A stretch of DNA of 64,000 nucleotides, from the IMG/VR virus record IMGVR_UViG_3300049215_000771, positions 468,730 through 532,729 of that record. One strand, written 5' to 3'. Each line of letters opens with the position of its first letter. Within the stretch, counting starts at the first letter, position 1. Below, piece by piece: positions 9,512 through 31,752 of the stretch. The position numbers were made by a program, and so were the translations under genes. The notes under the pieces were generated by a model that was not told the DNA's origin, ran no database searches, and saw only the letters and a program-made list of their open reading frames with translations.

Positions 9512-9868
9512 TCACTGAGGGCAGGCCGGACTAATATGGTCGAACCACAACGGGGCCGGCTCACAATTCCCGATATTGACGAGACGCTGAACTGCACCGT
9601 CATCTTTGTGGATCGAAAAACTCACACCGCAAACCAGCGACATGGCTGTATACTCAATGCCAGTCGTATCCAGGTAAGCCTTCACACCTTTCTGTTGCTC
9701 GTCGGCGTGATCCTTGCGCCATTGTCTTTTGTCGTAAACGCCTGCGGGCACGTCATCCGGGTCGTCGAAATGAAGGTACACGTCAAGCCGATCACCATCA
9801 TCCTCGACATGCCTCCGCAGATGCGGCGTACACCGCTTTTCCTGGGCTGCCCATTCAGCAAGTGTCAT
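9512..9868 (-). CDS. Hypothetical protein
   Basis: Coupled ORF. Confidence 0.55.
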   Translation of the reverse strand: MTLAEWAAQEKRCTPHLRRHVEDDGDRLDVYLHFDDPDDVPAGVYDKRQWRKDHADEQQKGVKAYLDTTGIEYTAMSLVCGVSFSIHKDDGAVQRLVNIGNCEPAPLWFDHISPACPQ

Positions 9869-10194
9869 GTTGGCCTCAGTTTCATCCTCGCCCGTAATGC
9901 CAGCCTGCTTTTCAGCAACGGGCTGTCCTGGCGAGTCTTCCTTTCGTCGTTATCGTCGATGCTCCTGTGTTGCTTCTCTCCGACAACCACCAAGTCATCG
10001 GGATTGTAACCATAACGAAGGTTACTCGGCTGCCACCGCACATCCACTTCCGGCCCCTGGAAGGTTCCGTAGTCCAGAAGCCCATCCACAACGCCGATGC
10101 AATCACCAAACTCTTCAATATGTTCAGCGCAACCATTGCCGATCATGGCCTGCTTGAGTTCTTCCGACATTCTTACTAGGGTGCCAGGTTTCAT
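9865..10194 (-). CDS. Small beta-barrel-like protein with HRSIDD motif
   Basis: MKPGTLVRM...VDVRW; KQHRSIDD. Confidence 0.65.
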   Translation of the reverse strand: MKPGTLVRMSEELKQAMIGNGCAEHIEEFGDCIGVVDGLLDYGTFQGPEVDVRWQPSNLRYGYNPDDLVVVGEKQHRSIDDNDERKTRQDSPLLKSRLALRARMKLRPT

Positions 10195-10499
10195 AGCTTC
10201 TCAATCTGCTTACAAAGGTCACGAAGGAACCTGTTCCTCCTGGCTTCGATTGCCTCCCGAAGCATCGACACGAGTGCGCCGCCGTGATCCTGAACCGTCA
10301 CCCGCCCCATCTCCCAGCCTCCCCTGGAGAGAATATGGAAGCTGTCGTCTACACTAAAAGACGCCTCAGCCCGCTCAAGGTTCAGATTAAAAACTTCCGG
10401 CTCGCCCCCGCTGGTGTGCCAGATGAAGCGGTCTTCGTTGGTTGCGTGGACCAACTCTTCGAGGATGACGGAAACTTTCTCGGTGTCAAGTAACGGCAT
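10191..10499 (-). CDS. Hypothetical protein
   Basis: Coupled ORF. Confidence 0.55.
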   Translation of the reverse strand: MPLLDTEKVSVILEELVHATNEDRFIWHTSGGEPEVFNLNLERAEASFSVDDSFHILSRGGWEMGRVTVQDHGGALVSMLREAIEARRNRFLRDLCKQIEKL

Positions 10500-10767
10500 C
10501 TTGCGTCTTCTCGTGCTTCAAGCAATGGTAGTGTTCCAGACCACGGGTCGGGAAAACGTAGTACCCACAGTGTTCCGTGAAGACAGCAATTTCTTCTCGC
10601 TGCTCGTCACGCACCAGGAAAGCGTAGTTGAAGAACATATTCGAGCCGTCCTCAAACTGGATCGACACGAACGAATTGAACTGGCTCAGGTCGAACCAGT
10701 TGTTCTTCTTGATGTAGTCCTGCCAGTGTTTGGGCAAGTTGTTGAAAAACTTGTCAATGACGTTCAT
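10486..10767 (-). CDS. Hypothetical protein
   Basis: Coupled ORF. Confidence 0.6.
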   Translation of the reverse strand: MNVIDKFFNNLPKHWQDYIKKNNWFDLSQFNSFVSIQFEDGSNMFFNYAFLVRDEQREEIAVFTEHCGYYVFPTRGLEHYHCLKHEKTQDAVT

Positions 10768-11042
10768 TTCTTCTTCCTGTATCGACCGTCGATCTCTTCT
10801 TCCCGGAACTCATCCACCACGTTTTTCTCGACGTGATGGAGTTTGTACCAGTGTTCCTTATGGATTCCAGTTGTGTAGCGACCGACGACCACGGCAATTG
10901 CGCCATTCCAGTAGTAGGGCGTCTGGCCGTCCTTGGATCGTCCCTTCAGGACACGAACTTTCTGACCTGGCTCGTACAAATAGGGTTTAGGGTCCGGGCG
11001 GTTGTATGCTTTCACCAACAGGTCCATGAAGGTGTCGCTCAT
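10764..11042 (-). CDS. SH3/KOW-like small protein
   Basis: YEPGQKVRV...AVVVG. Confidence 0.55.
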   Translation of the reverse strand: MSDTFMDLLVKAYNRPDPKPYLYEPGQKVRVLKGRSKDGQTPYYWNGAIAVVVGRYTTGIHKEHWYKLHHVEKNVVDEFREEEIDGRYRKKK

Positions 11043-11231
11043 ACCTCAGTCAACTCCAATCCAAGGTCTTCACACAACTCGCTGGCAGCCTCCATCGAGC
11101 GGTTGTAGACCGTTTTACCTTGCCGATCATTGATGAACAATTCACCGCCGTTGTAGTAGCCAGCAAGTCCATGATCGGATTTCTTACAGGCTTCACGCAA
11201 TTGTTTCAGCGCCAACATTATCTTCTCCTTG

Positions 11232-11312
11232 TGACCGGGGAGGGAGTCGAACCCTCACGCCTTTCGGCACAGCGTTCTAAGCGCTGCGTGGCTGCCATTA
11301 CACCACCCGGCC
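11232..11312 (-). tRNA. tRNA-Leu(UAG)
   Basis: CAGCG-CTTAGAA-CGCTG, long arm. Confidence 0.94.
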
Positions 11313-11744
11313 ATATTGACTATGACAATTAGGACATCTGAATTCCAAATTTCCCAACCTGTTGTCAAGCCAGTTCCCATTTTTGTGATTGACTTCCAAC
11401 ACAATCGGAAGTCCGTTCCAAGTGTCTCTGACAGGACAACAGGCACACTTGTACTCCACGCCACTTTCAATCATCGCCCGCCGTAATCGGGCGGCTGCTT
11501 CCCTTGATCCACTCTCACGCAACACCAGGATGTCTTCTGCATCCTTCCGGTTCAATCCGGGCTGCAAGAAATCGGTCGGCTTTTTGAAATGCGAAACATC
11601 AATCTTATACTCAGCCAATCGCCGTTTGATATGACTGAAGTTTCCACCAGCCTCCCTAAGCCCTAGTTTTCTGATTACATCGGCGACCGATTCACTATCA
11701 GAAACAATCGCCTGGAGCATGTCACGAGTATATTTGATTCTCAT
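11298..11744 (-). CDS. HNH endonuclease
   Basis: CACC...LEVNHKNGNWLDNRLGNLEFRCPNCHSQ; stop lies inside the tRNA. Confidence 0.9.
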   Translation of the reverse strand: MRIKYTRDMLQAIVSDSESVADVIRKLGLREAGGNFSHIKRRLAEYKIDVSHFKKPTDFLQPGLNRKDAEDILVLRESGSREAAARLRRAMIESGVEYKCACCPVRDTWNGLPIVLEVNHKNGNWLDNRLGNLEFRCPNCHSQYGRVV

Positions 11745-11774
11745 GACATATTGTAGTAGCCTGGCTGTAGAAAA

Positions 11775-11971
11775 CTACGGCGTGTCTTCCTTTTTTTCTC
11801 GTTCCTTCTGGATCGACTCCATAATGGAGTTGGTGAAAGCATACCCGCATCTGGTACATTTCCACATGCGCTCGCTTTCTGGAGCCTTGTACGGATCGGC
11901 GTACCGATCTTCCATGTATTCCAGGTCCAGTTCACAATCACCGCCGCAGATGCAACAAGTCGTGTCATGTA
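11775..11971 (-). CDS. Zn-ribbon protein
   Basis: CCICGG...CTRCG; start approximate. Confidence 0.5.
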
Positions 11972-12213
11972 GCATCGTCGATGCTCCTGTGTTTCTTGTT
12001 GACCACCACTTCGATGGGATCAACACAAACAACACTCCCATCTGCCAGTTCCACAATTATACAAAGACCGTGGGAGTCGTGGTACTCTCGAACGTACCCG
12101 ACTCCCTCCACCGGCTCTCCGTGATGTTCTGTGTCGTATTCGTTGCCGTTGGTGCCTCGGAAGTATACCGTTTTACCAACGGCATCACGACACTTCTCCC
12201 ACAAATTTCTCAT
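11965..12213 (-). CDS. Small protein with C-terminal HRSIDD
   Basis: KKHRSIDDAT*. Confidence 0.65.
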   Translation of the reverse strand: MRNLWEKCRDAVGKTVYFRGTNGNEYDTEHHGEPVEGVGYVREYHDSHGLCIIVELADGSVVCVDPIEVVVNKKHRSIDDAT

Positions 12214-13412
12214 TTCTTCAACACCACCGAAGAACCATCGCTCCGATCCCGAATCTCACAACCCAGGTCGATGATCCTTCTTTTCAGGGCATCGGCCCCA
12301 GCCCAATTTCGCTGCCGCCTGCATTCCTCTCGGAGTTTGGCAAGCTGGATGGCGTCGTCGGGAGCATCCTCATCCGAGAACATCTGGAAACCGAGTAATT
12401 CGGCTTGCTCCAGGCTGGGATTCACGAAAGTCGCTGCGATGGCTTCCGAAGTATTCAGGTTGGCGTCCATCGCCTTGGCGAAATCTTCCGAAACTCCATG
12501 TTCTGGTGCCGACTTCAGCCGATTCCTCAAAGCCTTCCACTGTTGCGCCGAAGTCCCATCCAACAACCCTTCAACGGATAAAGGTTTGGCATAACTGGCC
12601 GAGAGAATCCAGAAGCGAATCACGTTGGGGTCCGTGCCATTCGCCCGATAGTCCCGGATGTTGACGGCGTTCCCCTCGGATTTTCCCATCCTCCTGTCGC
12701 CGATCTGAACCATCCCATTGTGGAGCCAGATGTCCGCCAAGGGCGATCCGGCATGAAGGCATTCGGACTGAGCGATCTCATTCTCGTGATGCGGAAACTT
12801 CAAATCGTCGCCGCCCACATGAATATCCACCGTGAACCCAATGGTCCTTTCAATCATGATGGAGCATTCAAGATGCCAACCAGGTCGCCCCTTGGGGAAT
12901 TCAGACTCATTGGCCTTCGGCCCCTTCCACAAAACGAAATCTTCCGCCGTTTTCCGACGTGAAAGTTTCCCATATCCAGGGAACGTCTTCGTTTTGAAGC
13001 GAATGTCGCCATCTTTGTGGTAAGCATGGCCACTTTCGACAAGCGCCGTAGCTGCAACCTTCATCGGGATCATGTAGTCCGTCACACGGGGGTACAAGTC
13101 CGCCTTCTGGACGTTCAGCCAGCCCATGTCATTGAAATAGTCGTCGATGAAGCGGTCAGCCAGTTCTTTGCTGGTCACGCCCTCCTTTGCCGCCCGATCC
13201 ACGATTTTGTCGTCCACGTCCGTAAAATTCTGAACGTGGTAGACCTTCTGCCGGCGTTTGAGCCAGCGTTTCAGCACGTCCCACACAACATAGCTCCTGG
13301 CGTGTCCCAGGTGGCAGTAGTCGTAGACCGTTACACCACAAGCGTACATAGTGATCGGGCGGTCACTAGGGACTTCTTTTTCACGCCGGGTTAGGGAGTC
13401 GTGCAGTTTCAT
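12210..13412 (-). CDS. cysS: Cysteine--tRNA ligase (compact)
   Basis: MYACGVTVYDYCHLGHAR, NFTDVDDKI, GRPGWHLECS, FPHHENEIAQ, RMGKS. Confidence 0.96.
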   Translation of the reverse strand: MKLHDSLTRREKEVPSDRPITMYACGVTVYDYCHLGHARSYVVWDVLKRWLKRRQKVYHVQNFTDVDDKIVDRAAKEGVTSKELADRFIDDYFNDMGWLNVQKADLYPRVTDYMIPMKVAATALVESGHAYHKDGDIRFKTKTFPGYGKLSRRKTAEDFVLWKGPKANESEFPKGRPGWHLECSIMIERTIGFTVDIHVGGDDLKFPHHENEIAQSECLHAGSPLADIWLHNGMVQIGDRRMGKSEGNAVNIRDYRANGTDPNVIRFWILSASYAKPLSVEGLLDGTSAQQWKALRNRLKSAPEHGVSEDFAKAMDANLNTSEAIAATFVNPSLEQAELLGFQMFSDEDAPDDAIQLAKLREECRRQRNWAGADALKRRIIDLGCEIRDRSDGSSVVLKK

Positions 13413-13448
13413 GCGCCCATAGTACCCCGATTTAGAAGAAGTGTAAAG

Positions 13449-13527
13449 TAGCCTCGGTGGGAGTCGAACCCACATCCTTTCGGCACCGGGTTTAAGCCGG
13501 CTGCGTATACCGTTCCGCCACGAGGCC
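13449..13527 (-). tRNA. tRNA-Leu(UAA)
   Basis: GCCGG-CTTAAAC-CCGGT. Confidence 0.93.
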
Positions 13528-13531
13528 ATTC

Positions 13532-13573
13532 AACCAAATCGGTTGAAAGTTGGTGTTTTCAACCGATTTGGTT
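13532..13573. repeat. Perfect inverted repeat between PheRS and tRNA
   Basis: AACCAAATCGGTTGAAA...TTTCAACCGATTTGGTT. Confidence 0.8.
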
Positions 13574-14640
13574 TATCTAATCTCGACCTTCAATTCCTTC
13601 ATCCGGTCACGAAGCTGTTGCTGACGGGCGTTGATTTCCTCGTTCGTCAGCACCCGATCCATCGACCTGTAGGTGATGCGGTAGCAATGAGATTCCCGCT
13701 CACCTTTTTTGAAAGAATCCAGCAGCTTGACACTTTCAACCAGATCGCCGTGTAGATCACGAACAATCTGGTAGAAATCGTTCTCGCTGTAGCCAGCCGG
13801 AATCCAGAACGCCATGTCTTTGACACACGGCGGCTGGACCGAGAATGGCTTGAATTTAGAGTCCAGGTCTTTGAACTGGTTGAGGAAGCGTTCGTCCTCA
13901 CTCCAGAACAATCGGATGTCCGGGATGTCGAAAACAAGCATTGCCAGCCGCTCCAGGCCAACACCGAACGCCCAGCCCTGGGTGTAGTCACTGTAGTTGT
14001 CACCAAGAGGCCCAAGGGCTTCACAGCGCTTGATAACATCGGGATGGACGATGCCACAACCCGCTACTTCCAGCCACTCGCCATTCCATTCGATCTCCAA
14101 CTCCCAAGAAGGGTTCGTGAACGGGAAGTAGGAGTCCACGAATCTGTAGTTCAACTGCCGGTTATGTGGGCTGTACGGGATGTTGAGAACTCGTTCTATC
14201 ATGTCGAACATATGTTCCTTCAACATCCTCTCAAGGTCCAATGTCTGATATTTCGCCTTGTGAAAAAGGCCCACGCCTTCAACCTGGTGGAACACCGGGT
14301 AATGCGTGCGATCAATGGTGTCTCGCCGGTACACGTCGCCACAGACCAGGAACTTCATGTGTCCCTTGTTGATGAGCATGTGCTGATGGGCGCTGGTATG
14401 CGTCCTCAGAACGTGCTTCTCGTCAACGTAGTAGGTGTCAGAAGGCCGGCGAGAGGGATGGTCGGGTGGAATCAGCAGATGGTCGAAGTTATCTTCCACT
14501 GTCACCACCGGCCCGAACGTCTCGTAGATTTCGTGGCCGGGGAAGGCCATATAGATAGCCTTCTTGACAATTTCGAGCGGGTGTCGTTCCTTCAGATGGA
14601 GGTTACGCCCCATTTTTTCTTTGATGCTCGGCGGGATCAT
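13573..14640 (-). CDS. Monomeric (mitochondrial-type) phenylalanine--tRNA ligase
   Basis: LRTHTSAHQ, YRRDTIDRTHYPVFHQ, YFPFTNPS, GWAFGVGLERLAM, C-terminal FDX-ACB domain (YRSMDRVLTNEEIN). Confidence 0.95.
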   Translation of the reverse strand: MIPPSIKEKMGRNLHLKERHPLEIVKKAIYMAFPGHEIYETFGPVVTVEDNFDHLLIPPDHPSRRPSDTYYVDEKHVLRTHTSAHQHMLINKGHMKFLVCGDVYRRDTIDRTHYPVFHQVEGVGLFHKAKYQTLDLERMLKEHMFDMIERVLNIPYSPHNRQLNYRFVDSYFPFTNPSWELEIEWNGEWLEVAGCGIVHPDVIKRCEALGPLGDNYSDYTQGWAFGVGLERLAMLVFDIPDIRLFWSEDERFLNQFKDLDSKFKPFSVQPPCVKDMAFWIPAGYSENDFYQIVRDLHGDLVESVKLLDSFKKGERESHCYRITYRSMDRVLTNEEINARQQQLRDRMKELKVEIR

Positions 14641-14807
14641 GGCTTACCGTCCTGATCGACCCAAATCATGCGGAAGTTTTTGCCGCTCCACTCCATGTGG
14701 TAGCCTTGGCTTTTCATGTAGGCGTAGTGCATGGCGGCAATGCCAAAAACCACGGCGAACAACAAAACATACCAACGAATTTCTTTCCACATATTTCACC
14801 CTTTCAG

Positions 14808-14898
14808 CGGAAGAGAAGGGAATTGAACCCTTGCCGGACAATTAAGCCGGGCCAGTTTTCGAGACTGGTGCAGCAATCACAACATCTGCCTCTCTTCC
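14808..14898 (-). tRNA. tRNA-Ser(CGA)
   Basis: CCAGT-CTCGAAA-ACTGG, G73. Confidence 0.92.
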
Positions 14899-15479
14899 TT
14901 GGAGCCGCACTACGACCATCGTGGCCCCCACGCCTATCGTAGTTTTCGCAACCGGGCCTGAGAACGGCTTTTGACGGCCAACACAGGACTTAACTGGTGC
15001 TGGATGCGGCATAAATAGGGACCGTGCTGCGACCATCATAGTCCTCGACGAATGTATCGCAACTTTTCCAGCCGGACTTACCGAACGTGTTTTCGTTCTT
15101 GCCCCCGGCGCTCCAGGCGAAGGTCTTTTTCAACCATAGGAGTCGGTAAGGCAGCTTGAACTATTCACTCGGATACTGTTTGGATACGGCCCTCGTCGAA
15201 CAGTCCTCCCAGGCTTGTAGGATTTCTCGTTCGGGCAAGGTTGTGCGCACAACCTTGTCGGGTCCAAAGCGACTCAGCCAGTGTGCTATTACGCCAAAAG
15301 GATTGCACACCAGGTAGCCTAACCTGGGTGCGTTTACTCCCACTCTTTGAATGGTGGCTGCCTCTAAGCCAACATCCTGGCTATCTCCGTTTAGCTTTGG
15401 CGGCGAGTTTATACAGCCCGCCGTGATATATCCCGATTCCTTCATCCTGGTGGATGCCCAACCATTTCGATGAAGGAAG
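14899..15479 (-). ncRNA. Large ncRNA candidate containing a 23S rRNA GTPase-centre (H42-H44) like domain
   Basis: No credible ORF between two tRNAs; 15386-15270 reads AGATAGCCAGGATGTTGGCTTAGAGGCAGCCACCATTCAAAGAGTG-(insert)-GCGTAATAGCACACTGGCTGAGTCG. Confidence 0.8.
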
Positions 15480-15562
15480 TGTCCAAGGTGGGAGTCGAAC
15501 CCACAAGTCCTTGCGGACGCCAGCCCCTCAAGCTGGTGCGTTTACCGTTTCGCCACTTGGAC
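15480..15562 (-). tRNA. tRNA-Leu(GAG), long arm
   Basis: CCAGC-TTGAGGG-GCTGG. Confidence 0.95.
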
Positions 15563-15761
15563 AAAAATCGTCGTCTATGCTTCTCCAATCTTTCGGTTTT
15601 GCTGGTGGAAGTTTGCGAGCAAACCTCCCGTAATGCCTTTCGTCTACCACAAGACCGCCCCAGCCTTTACCAAACCATCGCTTCCCGGTCCATTCTTTGT
15701 CTTCCGGTCGGACGGTTTCACCAACTTCAAGAAACCGATACCCTGGAGGCGGTTTTCTCAT
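15528..15761 (-). CDS. Small protein with WRSIDD motif
   Basis: PPPGYRFLEVGE...KDWRSIDDD; runs into the tRNA. Confidence 0.55.
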   Translation of the reverse strand: MRKPPPGYRFLEVGETVRPEDKEWTGKRWFGKGWGGLVVDERHYGRFARKLPPAKPKDWRSIDDDFCPSGETVNAPA

Positions 15762-16014
15762 CTTGCACCTGAACAAAACACGTCCCTGGAGGCAAGTAGA
15801 AACTTTTCACCCTCCATGTCATTTCCGGCAGGACGTATTCGATCTCAATGATCCTACCTTCTTTCACCAACTCATCCAGTAAGTCGGGCACGTCGATGTC
15901 GTTCATCGACAGCTTCGTGACCACTTCCTCGTCCGCAGCAAGCTGCGTTGCTTTGCACCCCTGAAGGGAGATGATCTTGTCCACAAGAAACTGCTTGGCC
16001 TCGTCCCTATTCAT
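15727..16014 (-). CDS. Winged-helix-like hypothetical protein
   Basis: LLDELVKEGRI. Confidence 0.55.
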   Translation of the reverse strand: MNRDEAKQFLVDKIISLQGCKATQLAADEEVVTKLSMNDIDVPDLLDELVKEGRIIEIEYVLPEMTWRVKSFYLPPGTCFVQVQDEKTASRVSVS

Positions 16015-16360
16015 CGTCGATACTCCGGTACTTGCGTTGCTTTGGTGTTGGTTCGGGCTTCTTCCGAATCAATTCTATATCAACTTCCCAACAAGTACCA
16101 GGACTACCATCACGAATTGACTTGACGTTATATGCCGCCATCGGCTCCCCGCCACGACCATCCAGACCGCATCCATATCCATTGCACGGAACATACCTGT
16201 CCGTGATCTCACATTCGCTGTAGTCACGGCCCGACGCCAGTTCGGGACTGGCCCATTTTCCTGATGATGGCAAAATCCGAATGATGTCGCCTACCTCGAA
16301 CTTGTAGAGGTAAAACGGCGGGTTATTGTGCGGGGGATACGGGTTGGGTGGCACTGGCAT
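16007..16360 (-). CDS. SH3-like protein with C-terminal YRSIDD
   Basis: KFEVGDIIRI...RKYRSIDDE*. Confidence 0.65.
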   Translation of the reverse strand: MPVPPNPYPPHNNPPFYLYKFEVGDIIRILPSSGKWASPELASGRDYSECEITDRYVPCNGYGCGLDGRGGEPMAAYNVKSIRDGSPGTCWEVDIELIRKKPEPTPKQRKYRSIDDE

Positions 16361-16515
16361 TGTCTTGTCTCCTTGCACAGACAGGACAAAGCATAACATA
16401 ATGCTTGGACTTTGGCAACCTCACCATTTTCCAGCCATCTTTTTCGCCCCAACCGCCACTTTTCTTACTGCCCCCAAGCGGTTGCTTCCGTGTGCAGGTG
16501 TGACACTTGAGCGTG

Positions 16516-20949: not shown

Positions 20950-21026
20950 TGCCCAGGGTGGGACTCGAACCCACAAGACCCTCGTTCTGAGCGAGAGATG
21001 TCTGCCTATTTTTGCATCACCTGGGC
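20950..21026 (-). tRNA. tRNA-Leu(CAG), short variable loop
   Basis: TCTCG-CTCAGAA-CGAGG, 5-nt variable loop. Confidence 0.88.
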
Positions 21027-23006: not shown

Positions 23007-23097
23007 TTGGCAAGGTGGGATTCGATACCCACACGGTAGATTCGTCAACCTACCAACCCCCTCTAGCGGGGGCTGCGTCTTCTTCCGCCACTTGCCA
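23007..23097 (-). tRNA. Leu-like tRNA with 8-nt anticodon loop and 8-nt T loop
   Basis: GCCCC-CGCTAGAG-GGGGT; T loop TATCGAAT. Confidence 0.7.
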
Positions 23098-23098
23098 G

Positions 23099-23174
23099 TG
23101 TCCAAGGTGGGACTCGAACCCACAAAATCACCAGATTCTCAACCTGGCGGCTTTGCCAATTTGCCTACCTGGAC
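23099..23174 (-). tRNA. tRNA-Leu(GAG), short variable loop
   Basis: CCAGG-TTGAGAA-TCTGG. Confidence 0.88.
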
Positions 23175-25988: not shown

Positions 25989-26070
25989 TGCCTCCCCAGG
26001 GGATTGAACCCTAACCTTCTGCTTTTCAGGCAGATGTGCAGACCAAATGGAACCACTACACCAGAGAGGC
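25989..26070 (-). tRNA. tRNA-Phe(GAA), enlarged D loop
   Basis: TCTGC-CTGAAAA-GCAGA. Confidence 0.85.
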
Positions 26071-30163: not shown

Positions 30164-30272
30164 CGGAGAAGGTAGGAGTCGAACCTACAATGTCGGCGGG
30201 AGTTCCCCAGGGAATGCTTGGAACAATACACCTGGGTACTAGCCGCCCGCTTTGCCGTTTGCGTACTTCTCC
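30164..30272 (-). ncRNA. 109-nt tRNA-like RNA with elongated anticodon arm
   Basis: GGAGAAG/CTTCTCC-G, D-arm, T-arm; ~55-nt hairpin replaces the anticodon arm. Confidence 0.7.
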
Positions 30273-31578: not shown

Positions 31579-31752
31579 TTAGTTTTCTTCGTGATGCGCC
31601 GGGTGGTCTTCCACAAAGTCCGGCTTTGCTTCCAGCTTTCCGATAGCCACCTTCAGGTTGGCGAGGGTGGCTTCGGAAACGCCCCCTGAACGATTGATCT
31701 CGCTCAAGGCGTACTCCAACGTGTTGCGAACGAACTCGATGTCTTTGGTCAT
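31579..31752 (-). CDS. Hypothetical protein
   Basis: GGAAGG SD. Confidence 0.5.
   Translation of the reverse strand: MTKDIEFVRNTLEYALSEINRSGGVSEATLANLKVAIGKLEAKPDFVEDHPAHHEEN

What the first reader, a model, noticed from the sequence alone, without database searches (positions are those of the whole stretch)
14899..15479. ~580-nt ornate ncRNA candidate between two tRNAs
Seen: the longest gap without a credible ORF inside the tRNA block, with many stems (TTCCTTCATC/GATGAAGGAA, GGCG/CGCC, CAAGGTTGT/ACAACCTTG, CTTACCGA/TCGGTAAG, TCGACGA/TCGTCGA, ACTACGA/TCGTAGT). Processing of the flanking tRNAs would release it. Established: GOLLD and ROOL RNAs lie among phage tRNAs. It may be a relative or a new class that embeds an rRNA domain.
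Basis: partly seen in the sequence, partly recalled or inferred. Interest (0 to 1): 0.72.

Follow-up and report, generated by a model that had tools for sequence, protein, structure and literature searches.

The report
Phage RNA mimicking ribosome's L11-binding domain
The gap between two phage tRNA genes holds a small RNA gene that copies the L11-binding "GTPase-associated centre" of bacterial 23S rRNA; it belongs to a large family of phage RNAs that I could not find described anywhere and that probably acts as a decoy for a ribosome-binding host factor.

Summary
The gap (14899-15479, minus strand) is real. It lies between tRNA-Leu(GAG) and a tRNA-Ser(CGA)-like gene in a 533-kb phage. It is not one 580-nt ornate RNA, and it is not GOLLD or ROOL. 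Only the first ~216 nt fold better than chance. The 365-nt trailer does not (z -0.46) and is conserved nowhere.

The core is a 105-nt element, 137 nt with its extended stem (15264-15400). It reproduces helices 42-44 of 23S rRNA, the L11/thiostrepton-binding GTPase-associated centre (GAC). A 43-nt hairpin is inserted after U1090.

This element defines a family:
- At least 104 distinct copies occur in viral contigs, and others in MAGs.
- Unannotated copies occur in cultured phages, including pf16, UNO-G1W1, XacN1, CBB, GAP32 and BF.
- All 447 tRNAs within 3 kb of a copy lie on the same strand, and copies are often flush with a tRNA.
- Compensatory changes support every variable helix, and the U1060-A1088 tertiary pair is invariant.
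- A model built without the window scores it 84.6 bits (E 3e-25). True rRNA scores 46-54 bits.

The family is not in Rfam 15, and eight literature searches found no description. The most likely function is a trans-acting mimic, released by tRNA processing, that titrates uL11 or another GAC-binding factor. That function is inferred, not shown.

The parts
15480..15562 (-). Upstream tRNA-Leu(GAG). No encoded CCA. Its 3' processing would define the 5' end of the spacer RNA.
   Evidence: ARAGORN; Rfam tRNA 56.6 bits; sequence read.
15401..15479 (-). 5' leader with two hairpins (15437-15478 and 15401-15423). Not found in relatives.
   Evidence: Fold z -3.2; inverted repeat I3; no similarity to L006.
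15264..15400 (-). Whole GAC-mimic domain including an extended helix 42. The outer stem pairs 15394-15400 with 15264-15270. An rRNA-like H42 internal loop (GGAGAUA / UGA) follows.
   Evidence: Inverted repeat I10; fold z -3.83; Rfam LSU alignment covering the H42 loop. Only the window and L006, of 104 copies, show this loop on both strands.
15277..15381 (-). Family core, equivalent to E. coli 23S 1051-1108. H42 stem: 15377-15381 with 15277-15281. H43: 15351-15375 (A1067 = 15365). U1082-A1086: 15350 and 15346. H44 5' strand G1087-U1090: 15345-15342.
   Evidence: Leave-out covariance model R2: 84.6 bits, E 3.3e-25 over 15269-15389. Covariation tables.
15299..15341 (-). 43-nt insertion in the H44 bulge, directly after U1090. 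Basal stem GGGA/UCCU, an internal loop, then hairpin GCACCCAGG...CCUGGUGUGC. This is the variable 'expansion' site of the family.
   Evidence: The basal stem pairs in 104, 103, 96 and 74 of 104 family members, with many pair types. Sequence read.
15282..15298 (-). Conserved linker UUUG (15295-15298), the 1095-loop hairpin GCGUAAUAGC (15285-15294, A1095 = 15290), then A1101, C1102 and A1103. A1101 would pair with U1090.
   Evidence: Family-specific motif TTGGCGTADHAGCACAC. It differs from true rRNA, which reads AGCGUAAUAGCUCAC.
15236..15257 (-). Perfect 22-nt palindromic hairpin just 3' of the domain. No U-tract follows. Possibly a processing or stability element.
   Evidence: Inverted repeat I2; also the only second match in the genome-wide self-search. 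Its role is inferred.
14899..15235 (-). Trailer of unknown nature. It has no credible ORF, no fold signal and no conservation. A 217-nt exact contig (15007-15223) is present in a metatranscriptome.
   Evidence: Fold z -0.46; no similarity to L006 or the phage database; RNA-library contig at depth 6.7, against 2.3-2.6 on coding flanks.
14808..14898 (-). Downstream tRNA-Ser(CGA)-like gene with an enlarged D-loop. RNase P cleavage at its 5' end (general knowledge) would define the 3' end of the spacer RNA.
   Evidence: Rfam tRNA 42.3 bits, E 2.3e-7; not called by ARAGORN.

Best explanation
Positions 15264-15400 (minus strand) encode a small stable RNA that mimics the GTPase-associated centre (GAC) of bacterial 23S rRNA. 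The GAC comprises helices 42-44 and is the binding platform for ribosomal protein uL11.

The RNA is one compact member of a large, apparently undescribed family of phage RNA genes that sit inside tRNA arrays. It is probably transcribed with the neighbouring tRNAs. RNase Z or an equivalent activity behind the upstream tRNA, and RNase P in front of the downstream tRNA, would release it. Trimming would then leave the tightly folded domain.

The family keeps the nucleotides that build the GAC tertiary fold while letting helices covary. It most likely acts in trans as a decoy that binds the host factor recognising that fold, with uL11 as the prime candidate. In this window and L006 the H42 loop is also copied, so L10-L12 may bind as well. 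Titrating uL11 would alter uL11-dependent ribosome functions in the infected cell, such as RelA activation, RF1-dependent termination and factor binding.

Shown here: the family, the fold, the covariation, the tRNA-array context and the window's membership. Inferred: expression as a stable RNA, uL11 binding and the physiological effect.

My estimates: GAC-mimic family member 0.95; stable trans-acting RNA 0.7; binds uL11 0.6; benefit comes from uL11 titration 0.35-0.4.
For: Identity and family:
- Rfam LSU model positions 1083-1154 match the region, with a 55-nt insert inside H44.
- Of 26 viral loci holding the exact H43 motif, only one is true rRNA.
- A second scan with the family-specific 3' motif gave at least 120 loci. 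Of 129 motif matches, 118 have the 5' half upstream, giving 104 distinct elements.
- A covariance model built without the window or L006 scores the window 84.6 bits (E 3e-25). True 23S GAC scores 46-54 bits.

Fold:
- H42 pairs 1049-1055/1104-1110 are 80-99% paired with up to 6 pair types. Shifted-register controls give about 35-40% on the variable outer pairs.
- Pair 1058-1080: UA 47, GC 29, AU 19, CG 4.
- Pair 1082-1086: UA 62, CG 26, AU 11.
- The tertiary pair U1060-A1088 is kept in 104 of 104.
- RNAalifold finds 15 of 24 pairs with compensatory changes.

Constraint pattern: fold-building nucleotides (U1060, G1071, C1072, A1084, A1085, G1087, A1088, G1089) are 99-100% conserved. The exposed factor/antibiotic-contact bases A1067 (88%) and G1068 (77%) are looser. 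This fits recognition of the fold, which is how uL11 binds (established knowledge: Wimberly 1999, Conn 1999).

Context:
- All 447 tRNAs within 3 kb lie on the same strand, and 45 of 104 elements have a tRNA within 50 nt.
- In phage UNO-G1W1 the element fills the tRNA-Trp/tRNA-Arg gap. In pf16 it lies in the tRNA-Asn/tRNA-Pro gap.
- There is no conserved protein neighbour, so the partner is host-encoded.
- The phage has no uL11 or L10 gene, so this is not an r-protein leader.
- The window's neighbours are translation genes: CysRS, monomeric PheRS and tRNAs.

Not a recent host capture: phages of gamma-proteobacteria carry AAAGAGU, whereas the true 23S copy in L027 reads AAAGAAAGCG. All members share the same insertion site, the UUUG linker and a purine at 1101.
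Against: - No binding data exist. The protein-RNA complex job was not folded and gives no evidence either way.
- Expression of the GAC part is not shown. In the one metatranscriptome holding this phage, exact contigs cover the trailer (15007-15223) and two coding stretches, but not 15264-15400. DNA carry-over cannot be excluded.
- RNA runs hold only 30-47% of the sampled words of another family member.
- The conserved insertion site and UUUG linker have no explanation under a pure uL11-sponge model.
- Whether a decoy RNA could compete with ribosomes for uL11 in vivo is unknown.
- Invariance of 1091-1104 in my set is partly by construction, because that motif was the search pattern.
Confidence: 0.45

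Rival explanations
1. Decoy substrate for GAC-directed weapons. The free GAC copy soaks up a host- or competitor-encoded toxin, enzyme or antibiotic that attacks helices 43/44. Candidates are Tre23-like RNA ADP-ribosyltransferases, rRNA nucleases or methyltransferases, and thiopeptides. This would parallel the way phage tRNAs replace or shield tRNAs hit by anticodon nucleases.
For: - Tre23 ADP-ribosylates 23S nucleotides 1095-1098 of H44 and blocks EF-G GTPase activity (PMC8661411).
- The family keeps G1093, U1094, A1095 and A1098 in the copies found through the 5' pattern.
- The element lives in tRNA arrays. Held papers describe such arrays as putative anti-defence loci (abstracts of PMC12803027 and PMC13096335).
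- In XacN1 the element abuts a gene annotated as 2'-5' RNA ligase.
Against: - I know of no anti-phage defence system that targets the GAC, and none turned up in the searches.
- The target bases A1067 (88%), 1096 and 1097 vary.
- Thiopeptides are irrelevant for many Gram-negative hosts in which the family occurs.
- No toxin or immunity gene is linked to the element.
Confidence: 0.2
2. The GAC fold is a carrier or docking module. It either recruits or traps a translational GTPase, RelA or a release factor off the ribosome, or it simply provides a nuclease-resistant scaffold that presents the variable insert, which would carry the real activity.
For: - The insertion site and UUUG linker are strictly conserved, and inserts reach about 370 nt.
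- Within the CBB/BF/GAP32 lineage the whole 255-nt element, insert included, is 82-86% conserved.
- A recurring hairpin motif, CACCCC-loop-GGUAAGG, with a covarying closing pair, appears in many inserts.
- The phage also encodes two L7/L12 C-terminal-domain proteins.
Against: - Inserts share no common sequence across the family and can shrink to a 25-43-nt hairpin (window, L037) or be absent (L013, L024, L026).
- L12-domain genes do not co-occur with the element: 1 weak hit in 50 carrier records.
Confidence: 0.12
3. One reading: the whole ~580-nt spacer is one large ornate RNA of the GOLLD/ROOL type.
For: - The size is close to ROOL and the location is among phage tRNAs.
- The whole-gap fold has z -3.4.
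- A 217-nt trailer contig is present in an RNA library.
Against: - No GOLLD or ROOL hit at E<=10.
- The trailer folds no better than shuffles (z -0.46).
- Only the GAC domain is shared with L006.
- Typical family members are 87-427 nt and flush with tRNAs.
Confidence: 0.04
4. A functionless scrap of host 23S rDNA picked up by the phage.
For: rRNA fragments do occur in phage records, for example the Paenibacillus phage Pd_22F hit, which is plain rRNA sequence.
Against: - At least 104 distinct copies carry compensatory changes, a shared derived insertion and linker, and a fixed orientation in tRNA arrays.
- The flanks are not rRNA.
- The sequence differs from gamma-proteobacterial rRNA (L027) in phages of such hosts.
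Confidence: 0.02

Closest known systems
23S rRNA GTPase-associated centre (helices 42-44, E. coli 1051-1108; the L11/thiostrepton-binding domain)
   Same: Near-identical H43 with the 1067 loop. It also shares the U1060-A1088 and 1082-1086 pairs, the 1095 loop and the three-way junction closed by H42. The window and L006 even copy the H42 internal loop.
   Different: It is a free-standing gene of about 100-430 nt in phage tRNA arrays, not part of an rRNA. It has a variable domain inserted after U1090, a UUUG linker and a purine at 1101. A family model separates it from true rRNA by about 30-50 bits.
GOLLD and ROOL large ornate RNAs
   Same: They are phage or prophage non-coding RNAs often found next to tRNA genes. 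The spacer length here resembles ROOL (from memory of the published descriptions).
   Different: There is no covariance-model match. The conserved unit is much smaller and is an rRNA domain copy. No rRNA mimicry is known for GOLLD or ROOL.
Ribosomal-protein operon leaders that mimic rRNA binding sites (for example the L10 and L1/L11-operon leaders)
   Same: The principle is the same: an RNA imitates the rRNA site of a ribosomal protein.
   Different: Those are cis-regulatory 5' UTRs with partial mimicry, placed upstream of r-protein genes. Here there is no uL11 or L10 gene in the genome. The whole domain is copied almost base for base, and the context is tRNA genes.
Phage T4 small stable RNAs rnaC and rnaD (species 1 and 2 RNAs of the tRNA cluster)
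   Same: They are small stable RNAs of unknown function encoded inside a phage tRNA cluster and processed with the tRNAs (annotation).
   Different: They are not homologous. The family model finds nothing over rnaC/rnaD with filters off; the best match there is 4.9 bits, E 0.53.
Phage tRNA arrays and other phage RNA mimics (tRNA replacements against anticodon nucleases, pseudo-ToxI, Y-RNA-like and tmRNA genes in arrays)
   Same: They share the same genomic niche and the likely logic of supplying a copy or decoy of a host translation RNA. YrlA-like and tmRNA genes occur in sister loci.
   Different: The mimicked molecule is a ribosomal RNA domain, which to my knowledge has not been reported.

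Membership tests
GOLLD RNA (Rfam) | Match to the Rfam covariance model | tested here: not met
   cmscan of 14600-15700 at E<=10 lists no GOLLD hit. None appears in 8 sister loci at E<=0.1.
ROOL RNA (Rfam) | Match to the Rfam covariance model | tested here: not met
   No ROOL hit at E<=10 or in sister loci.
Genuine bacterial 23S rRNA gene or fragment | Contiguous rRNA sequence beyond H42-H44, and an uninterrupted H44 | tested here: not met
   Only model positions 1083-1154 match, at 33 bits against a gathering score of 50, with a 55-nt insert. The flanks are tRNAs. Sister loci lack the PTC, SRL and H69 motifs, except true-rRNA locus L027, which has the PTC and H69 motifs.
Phage GAC-mimic RNA family (defined in this report) | H42-like closing helix that covaries | tested here: met
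   Window pairs 15377-15381 with 15277-15281 and extends further. Family pairs are 80-99% paired with up to 6 pair types.
Phage GAC-mimic RNA family (defined in this report) | H43 with the 1067 loop, the U1060-A1088 tertiary pair and the 1082-1086 pair | tested here: met
   All are present in the window. In the family: U1060-A1088 in 104 of 104; pair 1082-1086 as UA 62, CG 26, AU 11.
Phage GAC-mimic RNA family (defined in this report) | Insertion directly after U1090 with its own basal stem, then the UUUG linker, GCGUA..AGC hairpin and a purine at 1101 | tested here: met
   Window 15299-15341 is the insert and 15282-15298 the linker and hairpin. The basal stem pairs in 104, 103, 96 and 74 of 104 members.
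Phage GAC-mimic RNA family (defined in this report) | Significant score with a covariance model built without the window | tested here: met
   Model R2: 84.6 bits, E 3.3e-25, full length.
Phage GAC-mimic RNA family (defined in this report) | Same-strand location in or beside a phage tRNA array | tested here: met
   In the window, tRNA-Leu lies 98 nt upstream of the core and a tRNA-Ser-like gene lies downstream. In the family, 447 of 447 nearby tRNAs are on the same strand.
Ribosomal-protein leader (cis-regulatory rRNA mimic) | Lies in the 5' UTR of the r-protein gene it regulates | tested here: not met
   No uL11 (PF00298) or L10 (PF00466) gene in the 533-kb genome. The downstream feature is a tRNA.
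T4 rnaC/rnaD stable RNAs | Sequence or structure homology | tested here: not met
   cmsearch with filters off on the T4 tRNA region finds no meaningful match over rnaC/rnaD.
uL11-binding RNAs (functional class) | Binds uL11 | not testable with these tools
   Complex prediction returned NOT FOLDED for protein plus RNA. Only conservation of the fold-building nucleotides supports binding.

The most novel reading that the evidence does not exclude
Phages from many lineages make a free 'mini stalk-base' RNP. The GAC-mimic RNA would capture host uL11, and in this window's subclade perhaps L10-L12 too. This would strip or withhold uL11 from ribosomes. Infected cells would then become blind to RelA-mediated stringent control. 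RF1-dependent termination would also weaken, which would help the amber-suppressor tRNA(CUA) genes found in this window and in 7 of about 70 other carrier loci that hold tRNAs. It would be the first viral mimic of a ribosomal RNA domain and a new way of reprogramming host translation.
Probability: 0.25. Interest if true: 0.9.

Novelty: categorically new. Interest (0 to 1): 0.82.

Why it matters
Viruses are known to copy tRNAs, tmRNA and some ribosomal proteins. To my knowledge, and in the library searched, a stand-alone viral copy of a ribosomal RNA functional centre has not been described.

The family is widespread. It has at least 104 distinct copies in uncultured phages, and it occurs in phages of Pseudomonas, Xanthomonas, Aeromonas, Pectobacterium, Serratia, Cronobacter, Erwinia and Yersinia. 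In those deposited genomes it is either unannotated or overlain by a "hypothetical protein" call.

Its near-perfect conservation of the GAC fold points to a specific host target at the heart of translation-factor and stringent-response control. Cultured carriers such as pf16 on P. putida and UNO-G1W1 on P. fluorescens make this directly testable. The family also gives annotators a new RNA gene to call in phage tRNA arrays, and structural biologists a natural GAC with expansion domains.

Tried and rejected
- GOLLD, ROOL or any other Rfam family: no hits besides tRNA and a partial LSU match.
- Protein-coding reading of the gap: only short overlapping ORFs. The 94-aa ORF at 15161-15445 simply reads through the rRNA-like domain.
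- Close relatives of this phage, to test conservation of the leader and trailer: none via the PheRS-like protein in viral or metagenome contigs, and none via a subclade-specific DNA pattern.
- uL11-RNA complex prediction: the job was not folded and gives no evidence.
- Linked protein partner: all-against-all clustering of ORFs within 4 kb of the 104 elements gave no cluster present in more than 6 loci.
- Co-occurrence with phage L7/L12-domain genes: present in this genome, but only 1 weak hit in 50 other carriers.
- Bacterial-genome scan with the 17-mer: only 17 of 120 hits have the 5' half. I estimate about 600 chance matches for this 17-mer in 596 Gb, so the rest are probably chance. The organism list from that scan must not be read as a host range.
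- T4 rnaC/rnaD as homologues: rejected.
- Paenibacillus phage Pd_22F hit: plain rRNA sequence, not a family member.
- Promoter and terminator scans: promoter-like sites modestly above the shuffled expectation (6 found against 2.3 expected), terminator-like sites not (6 against 3.9). Consensus matches only, not used as evidence.
- Expression: read laying gave only a trailer contig, plus cross-matches from real rRNA at 15341-15387.
- Literature: eight full-text searches found no description of a phage GAC or rRNA-domain mimic.
Full report
**Setting.** The window is the last 64 kb of a 532,729-bp IMG/VR virus record. DNA runs from moss metagenomes hold the sequence. All 14 tRNA genes that ARAGORN calls in the window lie on the minus strand. 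So do the neighbouring genes: a class I cysteinyl-tRNA synthetase (12213-13529) and a monomeric phenylalanyl-tRNA synthetase (13576-14640). The finding is therefore read on the minus strand.

**The observation.** The gap 14899-15479 is bounded upstream by tRNA-Leu(GAG) at 15480-15562. Downstream lies a tRNA-Ser(CGA)-like gene at 14808-14898. Rfam's tRNA model scores that gene at 42 bits, but ARAGORN misses it because its D-loop is enlarged. tRNA-Leu encodes no CCA, so cleavage after the discriminator would start the spacer RNA at exactly 15479 (sequence). That cleavage is by RNase Z, from general knowledge.

The fold signal, however, is confined to the first ~216 nt:

| Segment | Coordinates | z-score |
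|---|---|---|
| Leader | 15401-15479 | -3.2 |
| rRNA-like domain | 15264-15400 | -3.8 |
| Trailer | 14899-15263 | -0.46 |

No credible ORF fills the gap.

**What the structured part is.** At gathering thresholds Rfam finds only tRNAs in the window. A permissive scan of the gap adds no GOLLD or ROOL. It does add a match of the bacterial LSU rRNA model (positions 1083-1154) to 15272-15390(-), at 33 bits and E 4e-8, with a 55-nt insertion inside helix 44. That stretch is helices 42-44, the GTPase-associated centre (GAC). From established knowledge, the GAC is where uL11 and thiostrepton bind. It is also contacted by EF-G, by the elbow of the incoming tRNA and by RelA.

In E. coli numbering, the window copies the following:
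- the H42 stem;
- H43 with its UUAGAGGCA loop (A1067 = 15365);
- the U1082-A1086 pair;
- GAGU (1087-1090);
- GCGUAAUAGC (1091-1100, A1095 = 15290).

A 43-nt hairpin domain and a UUUG linker are inserted between U1090 and G1091. Outside the core, the window also reproduces the rRNA's H42 internal loop. A further 7-bp stem (15394-15400 with 15264-15270) closes the domain.

**It is a family, not an accident.** An exact search for the H43 motif in viral contigs returned 26 loci. Only one (L027) is real 23S rRNA. The other 25 are isolated GAC-like elements with non-rRNA flanks. They revealed a family-specific 3' motif, UUGGCGUA..AGCACAC, where rRNA reads AGCGUAAUAGCUCAC.

Of 129 motif matches, 118 have a GAC 5' half upstream, giving 104 distinct elements. 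Their cores span 87-427 nt. The window's 105-nt core is among the shortest. Three loci (L013, L024, L026) carry a minimal GAC with no insertion at all.

**Covariation.** The 5' half was not part of the second search pattern, so its statistics are unbiased.
- The seven H42 pairs are 80-99% paired with up to six pair types. Shifted-register controls give about 35-40% on the variable outer pairs.
- Pair 1057-1081 switches between AU (94) and CG (8).
- Pair 1058-1080 is UA 47, GC 29, AU 19, CG 4.
- Pair 1082-1086 is UA 62, CG 26, AU 11.
- The long-range pair U1060-A1088 is kept in all 104.

The basal stem of the insertion starts immediately after U1090. It pairs in 104, 103, 96 and 74 of 104 members, with many pair types. 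RNAalifold, run blind on 25 compact members, recovers H42, H43 and the insert stem. It reports compensatory changes at 15 of 24 pairs. Its one departure from the rRNA fold is at the base of H44, where it pairs the linker UG with C1102/A1103. All the bases involved are invariant, so the data cannot decide between the two pairings.

Cultured-phage members add further compensation outside my search pattern. One example is C1092-G1099 changing to U-A in fHe-Yen9-04. The invariance of 1091-1104 in my set is partly by construction.

**Membership of the window's element.** A covariance model built from 23 members, without the window or its nearest relative L006, finds 15269-15389(-) at full length with 84.6 bits, E 3.3e-25. 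Other members score 60-105 bits. True rRNA GAC scores 46-54 bits. There is one copy in the window.

**Context.** All 447 tRNA genes within 3 kb of the 104 elements lie on the element's strand. A tRNA lies within 50 nt in 45 cases. No particular tRNA identity is preferred. No protein family recurs nearby; the largest cluster spans 6 loci.

The family is present, unannotated or overlain by 'hypothetical protein' calls, in cultured phages:
- Pseudomonas phage pf16 carries it in the gap between tRNA-Asn and tRNA-Pro.
- In Pseudomonas phage UNO-G1W1 it fills the tRNA-Trp/tRNA-Arg gap to within 6-7 nt, under a probably spurious antisense ORF.
- Confirmed by the model: Xanthomonas XacN1, Aeromonas 4_4572, Pectobacterium CBB and Yersinia fHe-Yen9-04.
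- Full-length BLAST matches (82-86% identity to the CBB element): Cronobacter GAP32, Serratia BF, the Erwinia pEa_SNUABM phages and Kaldavass, and Xanthomonas XbC2.
- Shorter or lower-identity BLAST matches: Xanthomonas XaC1, Pseudomonas Milchi and Astolliot.

Carrier genomes judged complete range from about 50 to 410 kb.

In bacterial genome assemblies, only 17 of 120 motif hits are real. I estimate about 600 chance matches for this 17-mer in 596 Gb, so the rest are probably chance. The real ones are in isolates or MAGs of Clostridia, Ruminococcus, Oscillospiraceae, Eubacterium, Acidimicrobiales, Neisseriaceae, Thioploca, Chloroflexota and others, presumably prophages or mis-binned phage contigs.

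Phages of gamma-proteobacteria carry AAAGAGU, whereas the true 23S copy in L027 reads AAAGAAAGCG. All members share the insertion site, the linker and a purine at 1101. The family therefore looks like one lineage spreading among phages, not repeated capture of host rDNA.

**What belongs to the RNA in this window.** Only the GAC domain (about 130-145 nt) aligns with L006. Elsewhere the domain alone typically fills the inter-tRNA gap. The leader hairpins are well folded but unique. The trailer is unfolded and unique, and no close relative of this phage could be found to test it.

In a moss or plant metatranscriptome, filed twice as X6 and X7, a 217-nt exact contig covers 15007-15223 at depth 6.7. 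Two coding stretches nearby sit at 2.3-2.6. There is no exact contig over 15264-15400. The huge depth at 15341-15387 comes from real rRNA of other organisms, with mismatches. So the trailer is at least present in an RNA library, although DNA carry-over is not excluded. Expression of the GAC domain itself is not shown. RNA runs also hold 30-47% of the sampled words of another family member, but I could not lay them.

**How it most likely works.** An RNA that keeps the fold-building nucleotides of the GAC at 99-100%, while its helices covary, is under selection to present the GAC tertiary structure. The more exposed A1067 (88%) and G1068 (77%) are looser. The family has no phage-encoded partner nearby. 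It occurs in phages of very different hosts. Its ligand should therefore be a universal host component that recognises that fold.

From established knowledge, uL11 binds the isolated 58-nt domain tightly and by shape. The other GAC ligands bind weakly without the ribosome. I therefore favour a trans-acting uL11 decoy or sponge, released from the tRNA precursor by the tRNA-processing enzymes. The window and L006 additionally copy the H42 loop that forms part of the L10 site.

Possible pay-offs of titrating uL11 all rest on textbook uL11 biology and are inferred:
- blinding RelA, as in the relaxed phenotype of uL11-less ribosomes;
- weakening RF1, which is interesting given the tRNA(CUA) genes in this window and in 7 other carrier loci;
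- altering factor turnover.

The main rival is a decoy for GAC-directed weapons. Tre23 shows that toxins do attack H44 nucleotides 1095-1098, and held papers describe tRNA arrays as putative anti-defence loci. A third reading treats the GAC as a scaffold or factor trap whose conserved insertion site matters. None of these can be separated with the tools at hand, and the complex-prediction job was not folded.

**Comparison with what is known.** The element is not in Rfam 15. It is not GOLLD or ROOL. It is not an r-protein leader, since the genome has no uL11 or L10 gene. It is not related to T4's enigmatic rnaC and rnaD, which share only the tRNA-cluster setting. Eight full-text searches found no description of a phage-encoded rRNA-domain mimic. 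Subscription journals are not covered, so prior description cannot be excluded.

**Verdict.** The finding is a 105-137-nt phage GAC-mimic RNA belonging to a large, apparently new RNA family. The remaining ~365 nt of the gap has no demonstrated structure or conservation. Function is inferred.

Noticed in passing
window 14808-14898 (-): tRNA-Ser(CGA)-like gene with an 11-nt enlarged D-loop. Rfam scores it 42 bits but ARAGORN does not call it. Rfam also calls tRNA-like elements at 20950-21026, 25997-26062 (partial) and 30164-30272 (109 nt, possibly with an intron) that ARAGORN misses.
   Followed up: partly
window 12213-13529 (-) and 13576-14640 (-): The phage encodes a cysteinyl-tRNA synthetase (PF01406, E 7e-91) and a monomeric, mitochondrial-type phenylalanyl-tRNA synthetase (PF01409 plus the FDX-ACB domain). 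The longest CysRS ORF runs over tRNA-Leu(UAA) at 13448-13527, so its true start is probably further downstream.
   Followed up: partly
window 23007-23097 (-), abutting tRNA-Leu(GAG) 23098-23174: Amber-suppressor-type tRNA(CUA), labelled 'Pyl' by ARAGORN, with no spacer to the next tRNA. tRNA(CUA) genes also occur in 7 other loci that carry the GAC mimic: L004, L036, L059, L082, L091 (GAP32), L093 and L107. No baseline was available to test for enrichment.
   Followed up: partly
G000:C1:186003-186209 (+) and 31617-31706 (+), outside the window: Two ORFs in the phage carry the ribosomal L7/L12 C-terminal domain (75 and 38 bits). No uL11 or L10 gene is present. L12-domain genes are not generally found in other carriers of the RNA (1 weak hit in 50).
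   Followed up: yes
window 9865-16399 (-), several small ORFs: A peptide motif [H/Y/W]RSIDD recurs at or near the C-termini of at least four small ORFs (9865-10194, 11965-12213, 15528-15776, 16007-16399). One instance lies immediately upstream of tRNA-Leu at 15566-15589. At the DNA level the motif is not a strict repeat: 3 matches with up to 3 mismatches, against 0.45 expected. Its meaning is unknown.
   Followed up: partly
L010 5015-5109 (-); L028 11564-11931 (-); L018 2334-2589 (+); L017 2650-2768 and 2952-3064 (+): Sister phage tRNA arrays also hold a YrlA (Y-RNA-like) candidate (36 bits, below threshold), a tmRNA gene, a group I intron (72 bits) and unusually long tRNA matches (113-119 nt) that may contain introns.
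   Followed up: no
L233 3991-4349 (+) and 5199-5391 (+): One bacterial-assembly locus carries two GAC-mimic copies about 850 nt apart (72.6 and 92.3 bits).
   Followed up: no
L265 1567-1674 (Pseudomonas phage UNO-G1W1, CDS ISREJYDI_CDS0126); also the 'hypothetical protein' calls under the matches in phages Milchi and Kaldavass: Annotated hypothetical proteins overlap the RNA element (antisense to it in UNO-G1W1) and are probably spurious calls.
   Followed up: partly
L263 834-1484 (Xanthomonas phage XacN1 ORF260): A gene annotated as 2'-5' RNA ligase ends about 10 nt upstream of the GAC-mimic element. This may link the element to RNA repair.
   Followed up: no
many family inserts, e.g. L022, L122, L047, L003, L045 (sequences): A recurring insert motif CACCCC-N-(GAAA or UAAC loop)-N'-GGUAAGG has a covarying closing pair (A-U, G-C, G-U, U-A). 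It sits shortly before the 3' strand of the insert's basal stem and may be a tertiary-contact module. It is absent from the window's short insert.
   Followed up: partly
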